DNA from: Utricularia gibba
Taxonomy: Eukaryota; Plantae; Magnoliophyta
Assembly: GCA_002189035.1 (NCBI GenBank)
Contig: NEEC01000002.1
Coordinates: forward strand, 1 to 64,000
Reading direction: 5' to 3'
Length of the DNA stretch: 64,000 nucleotides
Positions 55,063-60,644 of the stretch are shown here, in pieces; positions within the stretch are counted from its first letter, which is position 1, and each line of letters opens with the position of its first letter. The notes under the pieces are model-generated. The model was not told the DNA's origin. It was given only the letters and a program-made list of their open reading frames with translations, and did no database searches. Made by a program: the position numbers and the translations under genes.

Positions 55063-56997
55063 ATGGAAAATCAAGATGCGACTGCTGAAGAGTTTGAAGT
55101 AAGTAGCAAGCCTACTATACAGCCTGAAGAAACTGATAGCTGGGAGAATTTCAAGGATGGCGACATAATGCAACAAAAGTATGCTATCCAAGCTGAGGAA
55201 GCCGCGAAAATTCCATTCATTGGCGACAAGGTGATCATGAAGGAAGAGATTTTGTCTGGGGCATTTGTCTCTGTTCATTAACATTATAATCTTTTTCATA
55301 CAAAACTTCCATGGCTTCAGGGGGTTCTTTTTTAATCTTTTATCCATTTATCGTAAGTAATCATGTTCCTTTCTCTGTTTCCATATTGACATCAGAATGT
55401 CTGGTTTTCTCCTTCAATCTATCTTGCTATGGGATATTTTAGGAGCCTCTGTCATCATTAGAAGCTGAATACAAGTTGGGAAACCCTGTATTTGTAACAA
55501 AGATCAAGGTCTGTTTTCTTATTAAATAATCCACCTGTTTTAAGTTTTCCCCGTGTGGCTATTGATTTTTGATATGCATTTAGGCTCTAGCACAGCAATA
55601 TGATTCCATCAGGAGAACCAGGGGAGATGGGAATTGTTTCTTTCGAGGCTTCATGTTTGCATACCTTGTACGTCTTCTTGAGTATCTAGAGATTCTTCAT
55701 CATGGTTTCTCCTTTTCAGCTGGGATCATGGTCTCTAAAAATTAGTAAGTTCCCTGCTCAGGAGCACATCCTCATAACACAAGATCGTGCAGAATTTGAT
55801 CGCGTCAAATTCAATGTGGAGCAATGTAGAAGAACACTTCTCGATTTGGGCTATGCAGAATTTACTTTTGAAGATTTTTTCTCGGTATGGATTATTTATC
55901 TCCCAAACTATCCTTCCCATGTTTCAATCAGATTGCTAATCCTGCTTGTATGGGCAACTTCGTTCATCGGTGCATAATGTTCTGGGAGTTTATGTCTTAC
56001 CATTCAACAAATGTTATCAGCTTGTCATGAGAGATGCTACATCGATTGACTTGCTGCTCACTCTGTGGTAGTAGCTATGCTGAGATGCACAATTACTACA
56101 TTACCTGACCATAATAAATCTCTTCATAATTTTAGGGAAGCTTTATTTTACAATTGATTTTTATATTCACTCGGTTCACTTTTAGCCTACTTTGTTTTCA
56201 GTTTTTCCTTGAACAACTTGAGATTGTCCTTGGGACTGGTGATTCCATAAGGTTTATTAACTGACATTTATTTCCCTTTGTAGTTGACCTTCGTCCTTGC
56301 TTATCCAGTGGCAACACGCTAACGCTTGTATTCTATGTACAGTCATGATGAGCTCGTGAAAAGATGCAGAGATCATTCAGTATCTGACTACGGTAAGTGG
56401 GGGTTATCATAGATCTTGTGCTTACTCACGTTCTTGTTCCTTACCAACGTCCATTAAACGGGAGCTTTTGGTCAGTGGTAATGTTCTTCAGGTTTATTAC
56501 ATCTGGCGAAATAAGAAAGCGCACAGAGTTTTATGAACCATTTGTTCAAGGTTTAACAAATTCCTCAGTGGACCAGGTAAATTCTCTAAACCTTAAAGCA
56601 TTATGTTAGTTACCCAGCTCTTCGTTCATGTCTGTTGATGCATTAGGATCCACGATGCCTGCGATTTATAAAACACTTTGCACAACAAAATCTAATTGCT
56701 CCATGACCTCCCTCCTCCTGTGTCTTTTTTTGTTTGGAAAAGTTCTGCAAGTCCTCTGTGGAGCCAATGGGAGAAGAGAGTGATCACGTGCACATCACAG
56801 CCTTGTCCGATGCATTGGGTGTGCCAATTCGAGTAGTATATCTTGACCGAAGTTGTGATGACAGAGGCAATGCGATAGTTAACCACCATGACTTTACCCC
56901 CGCCCAAAGCAATGTCACTGATGCGTCTGAGCCGCTCAAGCCATTCATAAACTTGCTGTATCGTCCCGGCCACTATGATATTCTGTACCCAAAATGA
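55063..56997 (+). CDS. OTU1: Otubain-like deubiquitinase (OTU1/OTUB1), 8 coding exons
   Basis: RRTRGDGNCFFRGFMFAYL (catalytic Cys), EPMGEESDHVHITALS, LYRPGHYDILYPK* (catalytic His); all exons in frame. Confidence 0.95.
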
Positions 56998-57203
56998 GCG
57001 TAAGCCATAAACTTGGGGTGGCTTCTTCTCGTATGTTGAACAATGTATCGTCTAATCTGACCCTTACAACAGCCTCTACGTTATGTACTCGAGGAAGAAT
57101 AATCTCCGCAGAGTGCATATTTCGAGGTTTGATTCCAGACATTTTGCTACTTGTTCACTACATACGTGAAGTTAGAAATCCAGGAGGTTGACTTCTTCAT
57201 TCA

Positions 57204-58278
57204 TCATTTGAGTAGTGGACCCTGAAGTACAAGATGTTGGAGTGCTATGGAGTAGTTGGCAGATTCCCCGCTGGTATCATCATCATCCTTGGGAAAATAT
57301 CTCTTGAGTATGTATGATCCGTATTCACCCCCTTCTGTACAACATACTGTACACATCAGCACTTGCTGCTAAATGGATCAAATCTGGAAAGAAACAGGGG
57401 AGATGAAAAAAAGCCCACCGTTGATGCAGTAAATACTCGAGACCCATCTCTTGTAAATGTACAGCAGCCTTGGCGAGTCACCGTTGTGAGTGTCTGACAG
57501 AAGAAGTTCACAGGGGCCTTTCTCCCTGTGAATAACAATGGATTGAGAAAAAAGAAAAAAAAAAAAAAAAAGGTATCCAAAGATGAGCACATGCATACTT
57601 GGCATGGTGAATGGCGTTGTGACAAAGTGATAGAACACGGGTCATTGCCATGTCTCTTCCTCTAGGGTTGTTGTACCTCTCCTGGCATTTCCTTCAAGAA
57701 ATCAGAATGGGAAGTTTGAGCTCTATGATCTGAGTGAACGGATGATATGAAGAAAAGATTCTTACTTGTCGTGAAAATGATCCACGAAATCATCAATGAT
57801 GATTAGTTTCGGCATATTATCATGCAGGTGGAATGCAGCGAAGTACTTCTTGATTCCTTCATCATCCTCTACATATCTTCAGGTAAATTGGACCAAATAT
57901 CTCAGAGACGCTGCATCTCTAAAATATGAAGATATATGTGGTTGCTTACTTCATTTGAATCCGCTGGAAAATCTCCGAAGATGGAGCAACACCCTGGGAA
58001 AGGAGGGGAGGGTTCATTTCTAGCCTCCGTTTATTGCAAAGGATCACTATAGCGCCATTTCCTTCGGGCCCAGAATTGAATGCGAATTGGAAGAGCAACG
58101 AGGTTTTACCACTTCAAACAAAAACTTCGGAAATCAGCTAAGTAAAATCAAATGAAAGGAAGTTAAGTAGATAGGAGGATCAGTACGAGGAAGGCGGCCC
58201 CGAGAGAAGAACAATTGGCTTCGCCTTAACCGGAAGCTCGTGATTTGTCGCCTGCCTGAAAAAAAATCTCTCCACCAT
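57204..58278 (-). CDS. SWSAP1-like RecA/RAD51-paralog P-loop protein, 6 exons, 231 aa
   Basis: Exons 58278-58187, 58111-57950, 57876-57766, 57691-57599, 57525-57419 and 57334-57204 (696 nt, all GT-AG). Walker A PIVLLSGPPSSGKTSLLFQFA and Walker B-like PKLIIIDDF. The gene model is secure; the SWSAP1 assignment is from recalled similarity. Confidence 0.8.
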
Positions 58279-58382
58279 TTGCTTCCCGGATTTTGTGATT
58301 ATCAGTTTTTCGCGCACTAACTCTTTATTTGGTCGTCCGTCGCTGTGCGGTTACCCATTTGAAGCTGCTGCAATAGTAGTCA

Positions 58383-60644
58383 ATGGGGAGTCTGCAATTA
58401 ATCAGCTCGAGTATCTCGCAAGCTTCGCTTCTCCACTCAAGAACAGCGAACTACGCTCAAAACCCATCTTGGGCATCTCTCAAGACTAAAAGATTCTCTC
58501 TCAAAATCTCTGGTGGACAGCAGAGCGGAGAGCTCGCAAATGTGCATTTGGTTTATCTTTGCAAACAGAATAAACTTGAGGACGCCCATGAATTCCTTTT
58601 GGAAATGGACAGGAATCAGATTCATATTTCCCCTCAATCTTACGTACAATTCCTCAAAGCATGCTCGCGGTTAAAATCCGTGAATATCGGGAAGTTGGTG
58701 CGCCGCAGGTTGAAGAATCTGCCGGGCTTTCCAGTTCATCATCTTATCCAAATGTTTTGCGAATGTGGTTGCCTATCGGATGCTCAGGAGGTGTTCGATG
58801 AAATGACTGAAAGAACTCTGACATCCGGGGCAATACTTATTTCAGCATATGCAGACAGAGGGATGACTTTGGAGGCTTTGGAAACTTTTCAGAAAGTTTT
58901 GGATTCAAATTGTAGGCTGAAAGCTTCTGTTTTTCTTTGCGTCTTGAAGTCTTTTGTTGGTTCCTCCCATCTGGAGGTTGGGAAACAGATCCATTGTCAA
59001 GTTATTAAGGCTGGATTCACAAACAGTGTTGTCATGGGCACTGCAATATGTAATATGTACGCTAAATGCAGGCATTTGGAGTTCGCTGAGATGTATTTTA
59101 GTCGGATGCTTGAAAAGAATACTGTCTCTTGGACAACAATGATGGTTGGCTATACACTAGCCGATCGGCACGAGGATGCATTGAGATGCTTGCTTAGGAT
59201 GGTAGTTCAAAATTTTGATTTGGACGAGTTTGTGTTTTCAATTAGTTTGAAGGCTTGTGCAGCTCTGTCTGATCACAGGATGGGAAAGCAAATTCATGGG
59301 TGGATTGTGAAGCTTGGAATGGAAGCTGAAGTTTCCGTTGGCACACCTCTTGTAGACTTTTACGTTAAATCTCAAGATATGGAATCTGCTTGTAGAACAT
59401 TTGAGAAGATAAGTGAACCAAATGATGTATCTTGGAGTGCTATATTAAGTGGCTACTCGCAATTAGGTGAATTCGAAAAGTGTGCAAAATTTTTCAAGCG
59501 GTTGAGGATTGAAGGTGCTCTCTTAAACGAGTGCATGTTCACCAGTATTTTTCAGCTATGTTCGGCATTCACAGACCTCAGTTTTGGTTCTCAAGCTCAT
59601 GGAGATGCCATAAAAAGAGCGCTGGTTTCACGGCCTCGTGGAGAGAGTGCCATGATCACTATGTACGCAAAATGTGGAAGATTAGACTACGCTCTTCAAA
59701 TGTTTCATTCAATTGACGAACCTGACACAGTTGCTTGGACTGCTATCGTTTGCGCTTTTGCTTATCATGGTAATGCACTTGAAGCTCTAAAATTTTACAA
59801 AGAAATGCAAGCTTCAGGGGTCAGGGCGAATGCGGTTACATTTGTGGCAGTTCTTACTGCTTGTAGCCATGCTGGTCTAGTTCAAGAAGCAAGGCAGTGC
59901 TTGGAAACAATGAGCAGTGAATATGGTGTAGAGCCAAATCTAGACCACTACAATTGCATGGTTGATGTATATTCCCGGGCTGGCTTGTTGGAACAGGCAC
60001 TTCACTTGATAAAGACCATGCCATTCGAACCAGACGCAATGAGTTGGAAAAGCTTACTCGGAGGATGTACCATCCACAAGGATAATAATATTGGGAAAGA
60101 TGCTGCTGAGAAGCTACTTCACCTTGATCCCCAAGACACAGCTGCTTATATTCTCCTGTTCAATTTGCATGCTTCATCTGGGAACTGGGAAGAAGCTGGT
60201 CGCGTCAGGAAGCTTATGGTTGAGAGGGAGTTGAGTAAAGAGGTTGGGTGTAGCTGGATCACTGTAAAAGGAAAGATTCACCGTTTCGTTGTTGGCGATC
60301 GACACCATGATCAGACGGAGGAGATTTACTCAAAGCTTGAAGAACTAAACTTTTCCAGCAAAGGAAATGAGCTTCTGACTGACGATGACAGTGTATCAAA
60401 CATTGCGATTGCGAGAAGAGAGCAATCCCTCGTCCACAGTGAGAGGCTTGCGATTGCATTTGGGCTCATCTCAACGCAAGCCAACTGCCCAATCTTGGTG
60501 TTCAAGAATCTGAGGGCCTGCAGAGACTGCCATGAATTTTGCAAATACGTGTCGATGGCTACTGGGAGAACAATCGTTGTTAGAGATTCGAATCGATTTC
60601 ATCACTTTACTTCCGGGGATTGTTCCTGTGGGGACTATTGGTGA
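58383..60644 (+). CDS. RARE1: PLS-class PPR-DYW plastid editing factor, RARE1-like
   Basis: Intronless, 753 aa; N-terminal PSWASLK and NVHLVYLCKQNKLEDAHEFL, EPNDVSWSAILSGY, HSERLAIAFG...CRDCH...CSCGDYW match recalled RARE1. Confidence 0.8.
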   Translation: MGSLQLISSSISQASLLHSRTANYAQNPSWASLKTKRFSLKISGGQQSGELANVHLVYLCKQNKLEDAHEFLLEMDRNQIHISPQSYVQFLKACSRLKSVNIGKLVRRRLKNLPGFPVHHLIQMFCECGCLSDAQEVFDEMTERTLTSGAILISAYADRGMTLEALETFQKVLDSNCRLKASVFLCVLKSFVGSSHLEVGKQIHCQVIKAGFTNSVVMGTAICNMYAKCRHLEFAEMYFSRMLEKNTVSWTTMMVGYTLADRHEDALRCLLRMVVQNFDLDEFVFSISLKACAALSDHRMGKQIHGWIVKLGMEAEVSVGTPLVDFYVKSQDMESACRTFEKISEPNDVSWSAILSGYSQLGEFEKCAKFFKRLRIEGALLNECMFTSIFQLCSAFTDLSFGSQAHGDAIKRALVSRPRGESAMITMYAKCGRLDYALQMFHSIDEPDTVAWTAIVCAFAYHGNALEALKFYKEMQASGVRANAVTFVAVLTACSHAGLVQEARQCLETMSSEYGVEPNLDHYNCMVDVYSRAGLLEQALHLIKTMPFEPDAMSWKSLLGGCTIHKDNNIGKDAAEKLLHLDPQDTAAYILLFNLHASSGNWEEAGRVRKLMVERELSKEVGCSWITVKGKIHRFVVGDRHHDQTEEIYSKLEELNFSSKGNELLTDDDSVSNIAIARREQSLVHSERLAIAFGLISTQANCPILVFKNLRACRDCHEFCKYVSMATGRTIVVRDSNRFHHFTSGDCSCGDYW

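What the first reader, a model, noticed from the sequence alone, without database searches (positions are those of the whole stretch)
57204..58278. Hidden plant homolog of SWSAP1 (Shu complex RAD51 mediator)
Seen: six short exons, almost entirely absent from the ORF track, splice by GT-AG into an intact 231-aa protein: MVERFFF...PIVLLSGPPSSGKTSLLFQFAFNSGPEGNGAIVILCNKRRLE...IFQRIQMKYVEDDEGIKKYFAAFHLHDNMPKLIIIDDF...LLLSDTH...YKRWVSSIY. Knowledge: human SWSAP1 is of similar length and, as I recall it, reads PPLLLLGTPGSGKTALLFAAA...GPVLFL...LQKIRFQY...APSLLLLDGL. It partners the SWIM protein SWS1, whose Arabidopsis counterpart is SSN2. Inference: this is the plant SWSAP1, implying a complete SWS1(SSN2)-SWSAP1 Shu complex in plant homologous recombination. 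I know of no functional description of such a subunit in plants.
Basis: partly seen in the sequence, partly recalled or inferred. Interest (0 to 1): 0.75.

Follow-up and report, generated by a model that had tools for sequence, protein, structure and literature searches.

The report
Plant SWSAP1-like RAD51 paralog gene
This is a real, spliced and expressed plant gene for a small RAD51-like ATPase. It is found across green plants, labelled "uncharacterized" in public records, and is probably the plant counterpart of the animal DNA-repair factor SWSAP1.

Summary
On the minus strand, six GT-AG exons (58278-57204) join into an intact 231-codon reading frame. All five junctions appear in spliced contigs from three public studies. 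The joined protein aligns end to end with annotated plant proteins (70% identity to Paulownia).

The gene is not hidden in general. More than 400 orthologues exist, from angiosperms to moss, Chara and Chlorella. Nearly all are named "uncharacterized protein", and none is named after RAD51 or SWSAP1. No Pfam family passes threshold.

An AlphaFold model of the closest orthologue is confident (pLDDT 86.5). It matches Rad51, XRCC2, XRCC3 and RAD51D best (Z 16-17).

The specific link to SWSAP1 rests on three things:
- Size and architecture are the same.
- The published human landmarks (K18, F23xxA26, PLQSMP 44-49, D96) occur in the same order and spacing in the plant protein.
- A language-model search with only the motif-free C-terminal half returned the chordate C19orf39 (= SWSAP1) cluster as second nearest of 7.7 million.

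I could not obtain an animal SWSAP1 or a plant SWS1/SSN2 sequence. No direct alignment and no complex prediction were therefore possible.

Verdict: certainly a RAD51-paralog-like gene, probably (about 0.7) the plant SWSAP1. Partnership with SSN2 is inferred only.

The parts
58187..58278 (-). Exon 1: start codon at 58278-58276 and residues 1-31 (phase 2 end). Carries strand beta-1 and the first half of Walker A.
   Evidence: The junction 58187/58111 is seen in contigs of X1 and X2.
57950..58111 (-). Exon 2: GKTS of Walker A, the FQFA motif and the RLEMNPP motif.
   Evidence: The junction 57950/57876 is seen in X3. phmmer with this exon alone found 47 cluster representatives.
57766..57876 (-). 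Exon 3: includes the Walker B-like strand KLIIIDDF.
   Evidence: The junction 57766/57691 is seen in X1, X2 and X3.
57599..57691 (-). Exon 4: the CQERYNNPRGRD segment and the start of the long helix. The acceptor is at 57691, not 57661.
   Evidence: Joint 57690/57765 in three runs. Orthologues carry the same CQERY..RGRD segment.
57419..57525 (-). Exon 5: strand LLLSD, the GDSPRLL loop and YKRW.
   Evidence: Joints 57524/57598 and 57334/57419.
57204..57334 (-). Exon 6: the C-terminal beta-hairpins, with the stop codon at 57206-57204.
   Evidence: The joint 57334/57419 in X1 and X2 excludes the alternative acceptor at 57383 and intron read-through as the main form.
58102..58200 (-). Walker A, G27-P-P-S-S-G-K33-T34, split by intron 1.
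   Evidence: G27, P28, G32, K33, T34 and S35 are invariant in the family.
58081..58092 (-). FxxA motif, F38-Q-F-A41, five residues after the Walker A lysine. Human SWSAP1 has the same offset (K18, F23, A26).
   Evidence: Human positions come from PMC6440994 and PMC12167799.
58006..58026 (-). R60-L-E-M-N-P65-P66. The family consensus is RRRLExKPP with an invariant PP. It sits where human SWSAP1 has its conserved PLQSMP (44-49).
   Evidence: PMC6440994.
57789..57803 (-). Walker B-like I110-I-I-D113-D114. D113 is invariant. It lies 80 residues after K33; in human SWSAP1, K18 to D96 is 78.
   Evidence: PMC12167799.
58279..58382 (.). A 104-bp gap to the divergent DYW-type PPR gene, which probably acts as a shared promoter. 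Spliced contigs extend the 5' UTR of the minus-strand gene to at least 58349. An E2F-like TTTCGCGC site lies at 58308-58315 (+).

Best explanation
The locus encodes a 231-aa protein that consists only of a RecA/RAD51-type ATPase core, with no N-terminal helical domain. It belongs to a single-copy-like family conserved across green plants and green algae. The family is most likely the plant counterpart of animal SWSAP1, the non-canonical sixth RAD51 paralog of the Shu complex. By analogy with human SWS1-SWSAP1, it would bind ATP through K33 and hydrolyse it with the help of D113. It would pair with the SWIM-domain protein SWS1 (SSN2 in Arabidopsis), bind single-stranded DNA and the ends of RAD51 filaments, and stabilise or remodel those filaments, possibly against the FIGL1 anti-recombinase. 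Shown here: the gene model and its splicing, family conservation, the RAD51-like fold, intact Walker motifs, and the co-linear SWSAP1 landmarks. Inferred: orthology to SWSAP1, all partners, and the role in homologous recombination.
For: Gene and expression: there are six GT-AG exons and an intact frame. All five junctions occur in spliced contigs from three studies.

Family: phmmer with exon 2 gave 47 representatives. Full-length orthologues of about 235 aa gave 406-407 hits. They include moss, Chara, Chlorella and Coccomyxa. The window protein keeps 13 of 13 invariant columns.

Fold: the AlphaFold2 model of orthologue P0086 has pLDDT 86.5 and pTM 0.86. Foldseek's top hits are RAD51, XRCC2, DMC1 and RadA at E about 5e-10. 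VIA-align gives Rad51 Z 17.4, XRCC2 17.2, RAD51C-XRCC3 16.9 and RAD51D 16.5, above RecA, KaiC and DnaB at 14-15. The nearest non-plant Atlas folds are archaeal RadB at TM 0.7.

SWSAP1-specific evidence:
- Human SWSAP1 is 229 aa, with K18, F23xxA26, PLQSMP 44-49 and D96. The plant protein is 231 aa, with K33, F38xxA41, RLEMNP 60-65 and D113. The spacings are 5 against 5, 27 against 28, and 78 against 80.
- The whole-protein feature search placed a chordate cluster at rank 6, among the plant clusters, with score 0.95 and 218 of 256 shared features. That cluster has no Rad51 Pfam hit. The XRCC2 cluster scored only 0.84.
- The C-terminal half alone, which has no Walker motifs, returned the chordate 'C19orf39 (Fragment)' cluster as second nearest of 7.7 million. 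C19orf39 is SWSAP1.
- Like SWSAP1, the family does not reach the Pfam Rad51 model.
Against: No animal SWSAP1 sequence was available from any tool, so no pairwise, profile-profile or reciprocal search was run. The C19orf39 hit scores 0.78, below the tool's 0.9 reliability line, and the tool is not calibrated for parts of proteins. The rank-6 chordate cluster is not named SWSAP1. The landmark comparison uses only five published positions. The PLQSMP equivalent is similar, not identical (consensus RLESKP, window RLEMNP). Structural ranking does not separate SWSAP1-like proteins from other RAD51 paralogs, and no SWSAP1 structure appeared in the PDB searches. No interaction was tested. No Brassicales member appears among the 240 listed hits, although Arabidopsis has SSN2. 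An SSN2 partner of this kind is therefore not shown for Arabidopsis.
Confidence: 0.7

Rival explanations
1. A green-lineage RAD51/RadB-like paralog that is not orthologous to SWSAP1. It would be either an independent offshoot of XRCC2, RAD51D or an archaeal-type RadB. It may still act in recombination, but with other partners.
For: The structural scores for Rad51, XRCC2, XRCC3 and RAD51D are tied within one Z unit. The nearest non-plant Atlas folds are archaeal RadB. No direct alignment to SWSAP1 was made. Arabidopsis SSN2 is listed genetically alongside RAD51D as a suppressor of sni1, so plant SWS1 could instead use canonical paralogs.
Against: The feature searches point to chordate clusters, including C19orf39/SWSAP1, and not to XRCC2 (0.84) or RadB. 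The FxxA and xLExxP landmarks sit at the SWSAP1 positions. No member hits Pfam Rad51, which XRCC2 and RadB clusters do.
Confidence: 0.2
2. A RecA-fold P-loop NTPase with a role outside recombination, for example a KaiC/FlaH-like or Elongator Elp4-6-like assembly factor.
For: FlaH, KaiC, DnaB and Elp456 match at Z 14-15. Pfam gives only weak generic P-loop hits such as AAA_25, nSTAND_NTPase5, KaiC and DnaB_C. There are no functional data.
Against: Eukaryotic RAD51-family chains rank first in both structure searches. The canonical Walker A is invariant, which from general knowledge is not the case in Elp4-6. The feature-search hits are to SWSAP1 and XRCC2-type clusters.
Confidence: 0.07
3. A chance ORF mosaic or an expressed pseudogene.
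For: The exons are short, and some unspliced contigs exist (X4, and X1 record 2).
Against: Five junctions are confirmed in three studies. The protein is 70% identical end to end with an annotated orthologue. All invariant residues are kept.
Confidence: 0.01

Closest known systems
Human/mouse SWSAP1 (C19orf39), the RAD51-paralog subunit of the SWS1-SWSAP1(-SPIDR) Shu complex
   Same: It has nearly the same length (229 against 231 aa) and is also a core-only RecA fold. It has a Walker A lysine followed five residues later by FxxA, a conserved xL(Q/E)xxP motif about 22-23 residues further on, and a Walker B aspartate 78-80 residues after the lysine. Neither reaches the Pfam Rad51 model. The C-terminal half of the plant protein is nearest in feature space to the chordate C19orf39 cluster.
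   Different: The plant protein has a 15-residue N-terminal extension and a shorter tail after Walker B. The PLQSMP motif is only similar. No sequence alignment, no SWS1, RAD51 or FIGL1 binding and no ATPase activity were tested here.
XRCC2 and the other canonical RAD51 paralogs (BCDX2 and CX3 complexes)
   Same: These are the best structural matches after Rad51 itself: 8faz_X at Z 17.2 with 209 residues aligned, and TM 0.63 both ways. XRCC2 is also core-only.
   Different: Sequence identity is 11-16%. The plant family does not hit Pfam Rad51, whereas 86% of the XRCC2 cluster does. From general knowledge, plants already have their own XRCC2, RAD51B, RAD51C, RAD51D and XRCC3 (PMC8162660).
Yeast Shu complex subunits Psy3 and Csm2
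   Same: They are RAD51-like structural paralogs that partner a SWIM protein (Shu2). Psy3 matches the model at Z 11.0.
   Different: The match is much weaker than to Rad51 or XRCC2. [quoted passage not shown]
Archaeal RadB
   Same: About 230 aa and core-only RecA fold. It is the nearest non-plant fold in the ESM Atlas, at TM 0.69-0.73.
   Different: RadB clusters all carry the Pfam Rad51, RecA_N and KaiC models, and the plant family carries none above threshold. RadB is not a Shu-type partner.

Membership tests
RecA/RAD51 superfamily | RecA-type alpha/beta ATPase core fold | tested here: met
   The model of orthologue P0086 has pLDDT 86.5. Foldseek gives RAD51, XRCC2 and DMC1 at E about 5e-10. 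VIA-align gives Z 16-17 over 190-210 residues.
RecA/RAD51 superfamily | Walker A GxxxxGK[TS] and Walker B hhhhD | tested here: met
   The window protein has GPPSSGKT at 27-34 and IIIDD at 110-114. G27, G32, K33, T34 and D113 are invariant in 20 diverse members.
RecA/RAD51 superfamily | Match to Pfam Rad51 (PF08423) or RecA models above threshold | tested here: not met
   The six exons and ten full-length members gave only sub-threshold generic P-loop hits, and Rad51 was not listed at E up to 1. The PDB profile search matched only the P-loop of RecA.
SWSAP1 (Shu-complex RAD51 paralog) | Core-only protein of about 229 aa without the RAD51 N-terminal domain | tested here: met
   The protein is 231 aa. 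The model starts its first strand at residue 22 and is a single domain. Human SWSAP1 is 229 aa.
SWSAP1 (Shu-complex RAD51 paralog) | FxxA RAD51-binding motif directly after Walker A (human K18, F23, A26) | tested here: met
   The plant protein has K33, F38 and A41, the same offsets. F38 and A41 are conserved in at least 90% of members. Whether it binds RAD51 was not tested.
SWSAP1 (Shu-complex RAD51 paralog) | Conserved PLQSMP motif downstream of FxxA (human 44-49) | tested here: inconclusive
   The plant consensus is RLExKP with an invariant PP, and the window has RLEMNP at 60-65. It sits one residue further from FxxA than in human SWSAP1. L and P match and Q aligns with E; the rest differs.
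SWSAP1 (Shu-complex RAD51 paralog) | Significant sequence or profile similarity to animal SWSAP1 | not testable with these tools
   No tool returned an animal SWSAP1 sequence, and no such chain turned up in the PDB searches. There are only feature-level leads: a chordate cluster at 0.95 and the C19orf39 cluster at 0.78 for the C-terminal half.
SWSAP1 (Shu-complex RAD51 paralog) | Stable complex with the SWIM-domain protein SWS1 (plant SSN2) | not tested
SWSAP1 (Shu-complex RAD51 paralog) | DNA-stimulated ATPase activity, and binding to RAD51 and to FIGNL1/FIGL1 | not testable with these tools
   This needs biochemistry. The human data are in PMC12167799 and PMC6440994.
XRCC2 | Membership of the Pfam Rad51 family and orthology to animal XRCC2 | tested here: not met
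   There is no PF08423 hit. The XRCC2 cluster is at only rank 30 with score 0.84 in feature space. The structural match is tied with other paralogs.

The most novel reading that the evidence does not exclude
Green plants and green algae have an unrecognised sixth RAD51 paralog that is the true orthologue of SWSAP1. It would form a plant Shu complex with SWS1/SSN2, and perhaps with a SPIDR-like protein, and would protect RAD51/DMC1 filaments from FIGL1. It may have been lost or strongly diverged in Brassicaceae, which would explain why Arabidopsis genetics never found it.
Probability: 0.45. Interest if true: 0.75.

Novelty: new member of a known kind. Interest (0 to 1): 0.62.

Why it matters
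[quoted passage not shown] I found no paper in the held library that links SWSAP1 to a plant gene. In mammals, SWSAP1 stabilises RAD51 filaments, counteracts the anti-recombinase FIGNL1, and is needed for meiosis. In plants, FIGL1 limits crossovers and is a breeding target. A conserved plant SWSAP1 would therefore give a concrete, testable candidate for a FIGL1 antagonist and for the missing partner of SWS1/SSN2. It would also allow hundreds of 'uncharacterized' or misnamed gene records to be corrected.

Tried and rejected
- **First gene model.** An exon-4 acceptor at 57661 gave 221 aa. Spliced contigs and orthologues rejected it in favour of 57691.
- **Alternative 3' ends.** An acceptor at 57383 and read-through of intron 5 are not the main form.
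- **Pfam on single exons.** Nothing was found.
- **PDB by sequence.** Exon 2 alone gave noise: designed beta-trefoils. The family profile gave only a P-loop-level match, with the RecA score inflated by concatenated chains.
- **Obtaining an animal SWSAP1 sequence.** This was not achievable. The word-indexed search lists only the best 120 hits, and all of those are plant proteins. The key papers by Liu 2011 and Godin 2015 are not held.
- **Listing human variants** to map more residues. They are not given in the text.
- **One broad paper search** was uninformative.
- **Origin of the MMETSP members.** This stayed unresolved.
- **Joined CDS.** It was built and compared only inside scripts, from window.fa. 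It was never sent to a search or fold tool. Database searches used single exons by reference, and the structure was predicted for orthologue P0086, not for the window protein.

Full report
**Observation**

The region lies between two plant genes. One is an otubain-type peptidase gene on the plus strand, whose last exon ends at 56997. The other is a DYW-type PPR gene on the plus strand, at 58383-60644.

My first version used an acceptor at 57661 for exon 4 and gave 221 codons.

Laying Logan contigs of four public runs on 56950-58450 showed five joints: 58187/58111, 57950/57876, 57765/57690, 57598/57524 and 57419/57334. All five have CT..AC ends on the plus strand, which is GT..AG on the minus strand. 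They were seen in runs from three studies.

The third joint moves the exon-4 acceptor to 57691. With it, the six exons are:

| Exon | Coordinates (minus strand) |
|---|---|
| 1 | 58278-58187 |
| 2 | 58111-57950 |
| 3 | 57876-57766 |
| 4 | 57691-57599 |
| 5 | 57525-57419 |
| 6 | 57334-57204 |

These add up to 696 nt, an open frame of 231 codons.

The runs are only guessed to be RNA. Contigs that lack five GT-AG introns can hardly be anything else. Some unspliced contigs also exist.

**How the searches were run**

The joined CDS existed only inside scripts that read window.fa. Database searches used single exons by reference.

**What family it is**

Single exons hit no Pfam model.

phmmer with exon 2 (53 aa) against 1.84 billion representatives found 47 proteins. 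Several are full-length proteins of 230-260 aa. In a local BLAST, the joined model aligns from its first to its last residues with them.

A search with one of these, Beta vulgaris P0035, found 406 proteins. A second search with cacao P0056 found 407. Nearly all are named 'uncharacterized' or 'hypothetical protein'. A few carry names that look like P-loop-driven misannotations: tRNA dimethylallyltransferase, AAA ATPase, NPR3 and AGD3-like. None is named after RAD51 or SWSAP1.

The family reaches beyond flowering plants. It occurs in the moss Ceratodon, in Chara, Chlorella and Coccomyxa, and in marine eukaryote transcriptomes.

The closest relatives of the window protein are from Lamiales. Paulownia is 70% identical, without gaps over residues 1-226. 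The window therefore probably comes from that order or near it.

In a 20-sequence alignment (A1), 13 columns are invariant and 26 more are at least 90% conserved. The window protein keeps 13 and 23 of these. So this is a functional gene under constraint. It is 'hidden' only from an ORF scan, not from genome annotators.

**Fold**

Pfam gives only sub-threshold generic P-loop hits (AAA_25, nSTAND_NTPase5, AAA_16, KaiC, DnaB_C) for ten full-length members. The Rad51 model never appears.

A profile search of PDB sequences matched only the P-loop of RecA.

AlphaFold2 on the Paulownia orthologue with alignment A1 gave a confident single-domain model, with pLDDT 86.5 and pTM 0.86.

- **Foldseek against the PDB.** It ranks RAD51, XRCC2, DMC1, RadA and the new BCDX2/CX3 complexes first, at E about 5e-10 and TM about 0.6.
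- **VIA-align 2 against 48,161 representatives.** This independent search gives yeast Rad51 Z 17.4, XRCC2 17.2, RAD51C-XRCC3 16.9, RAD51D 16.5 and DMC1 16.3. Bacterial RadA/Sms, FlaH, RecA, KaiC and DnaB follow at 14-15.7, and yeast Psy3 is at 11.0.
- **ESM Atlas fold search.** The nearest non-plant folds are archaeal RadB, at TM about 0.7.

The protein is therefore a core-only member of the RecA/RAD51 fold, with invariant Walker A (GPPxxGKTS) and Walker B (hhhhD113). It is too divergent for the Pfam Rad51 model.

**Is it SWSAP1?**

I could not get an animal SWSAP1 sequence from any tool. The direct test, an alignment or profile comparison, is missing. Three indirect lines bear on the question.

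*1. Published landmarks.* Human SWSAP1 is 229 aa. Its Walker A lysine is K18 and its Walker B aspartate is D96 (PMC12167799). Its RAD51-binding FxxA motif is F23..A26, and a second conserved motif, PLQSMP, lies at 44-49 (PMC6440994).

The window protein is 231 aa with K33, F38-Q-F-A41, R-L-E-M-N-P at 60-65 (family consensus RLExKPP, PP invariant) and D113.

| Spacing | Human | Plant |
|---|---|---|
| Walker A lysine to FxxA phenylalanine | 5 | 5 |
| Walker A lysine to the leucine of the second motif | 27 | 28 |
| Walker A lysine to the Walker B aspartate | 78 | 80 |

The plant protein is simply 15 residues longer at the N-terminus. As I recall the canonical paralogs, they carry GKTQ followed by other residues here. 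That recollection was not tested.

*2. Whole-protein feature search.* A protein-language-model search of the ESM Atlas with a whole orthologue placed a chordate cluster at rank 6, among the plant clusters. Its score is 0.95, with 218 of 256 features shared. It carries the same weak Pfam hits as the plant family and no Rad51 model. The XRCC2 cluster scored 0.84.

*3. C-terminal half alone.* The same search with only residues 116-234, which contain no Walker motif, returned two clusters above the display cut-off. One is an arthropod hypothetical protein (0.80). The other is 'Uncharacterized protein C19orf39 (Fragment)' from chordates (0.78). C19orf39 is the former name of SWSAP1 (bioRxiv 10.1101/507632).

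The tool warns that scores under 0.9 are leads only, and that parts of proteins were not calibrated. Still, picking the one family proposed in advance out of 7.7 million clusters, with the half that lacks the generic motifs, is unlikely to be chance.

Together these make specific kinship with SWSAP1 probable. I put it at about 0.7, but it is not proven.

**Mechanism**

By analogy with the human complex, the protein would pair with the SWIM protein SWS1 and bind ATP (K33) and single-stranded DNA. It would bind and stabilise RAD51 filament ends, and ATP hydrolysis (D113) would drive remodelling (PMC12167799). It may also shield RAD51 from FIGL1 (PMC6440994). All of this is inference, and nothing about partners was tested.

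An E2F-like TTTCGCGC site lies in the 104-bp gap shared with the PPR gene. There are 8 such sites in the 64 kb on both strands. It fits a replication or repair gene but is weak evidence.

SSN2 is described in the literature as a SWIM-domain protein recovered together with RAD51D, BRCA2A and others as suppressors of sni1 (PMC5793187).

Among the 240 listed hits of two searches there is no Brassicales member. Monocots and basal angiosperms are listed at 62-67% identity, and Brassicaceae genomes are abundant in public data. Only 120 of about 400 hits are shown per search, so this does not prove loss. It does leave open that Arabidopsis lacks the gene or has a very divergent copy. That would also explain the lack of any functional description.

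I did not test it.

**Novelty and verdict**

No paper in the held library links SWSAP1 or a Shu-complex RAD51 paralog to a plant gene. A 2021 paper states that Shu proteins had not been identified in plants. I could not check classification databases such as PANTHER or InterPro, which may already group these proteins.

I rate this as a new member of a known kind. It is a real, conserved, expressed, RAD51-paralog-like gene and the probable plant SWSAP1. Interest is 0.62, because it would make the plant Shu complex and the antagonism of FIGL1 directly testable.

Noticed in passing
window 56734-57334: The otubain-type gene (Peptidase_C65, E 4.5e-30) ends at 56997 on the plus strand, only about 200 bp from the stop of the minus-strand gene at 57204. 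Spliced contig X2 record 8 runs from the SWSAP1-like exons across this gap and on beyond 56950. The two convergent genes therefore probably have overlapping 3' UTRs, or the assembler merged them.
   Followed up: partly
window 58279-58382: Only 104 bp separate the start codon of the minus-strand gene from the start of a 753-aa DYW-type PPR editing-factor gene (58383-60644, +). This looks like a bidirectional promoter. It holds an E2F-like TTTCGCGC at 58308-58315, one of 8 such sites in the 64 kb on both strands.
   Followed up: partly
window 57541-57581: A long A/T homopolymer-rich run lies inside intron 4. The reads tool skipped it as a repeat, and contigs seem to be cut there.
   Followed up: no
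window 57316-57540: Contigs that retain intron 5 (X1 record 2, X4 record 15, X3 record 12) coexist with the spliced form. They could be pre-mRNA, DNA carry-over or an intron-retention isoform. Retention would end the protein early, at ...SSIYCINGGLFFISPVSFQI.
   Followed up: partly
orthologues P0069, P0112, P0113, P0119, P0154, P0051, P0207: Public records name some family members 'tRNA dimethylallyltransferase', 'Regulatory protein NPR3' or 'ADP-ribosylation factor GTPase-activating protein AGD3-like'. These are probably misannotations that spread from a P-loop match or from neighbouring genes.
   Followed up: no
hit lists: No Brassicales or Brassicaceae protein is among the 240 listed family members, although monocots, magnoliids and Nelumbo are listed. 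The family may have been lost or strongly diverged in the Arabidopsis lineage.
   Followed up: partly
window 57063-58342: Runs X1 and X4 differ from the window at eleven single bases, including 58248 T>C and 58261 A>G in exon 1, and at one single-base deletion at 58116 in intron 1. These are likely differences between accessions of the same species.
   Followed up: no
P0002: A 6128-residue protein scored 67.8 bits against exon 2, yet no single stretch passed. It probably sums many weak P-loop-like repeats, as the concatenated RecA chains did.
   Followed up: no
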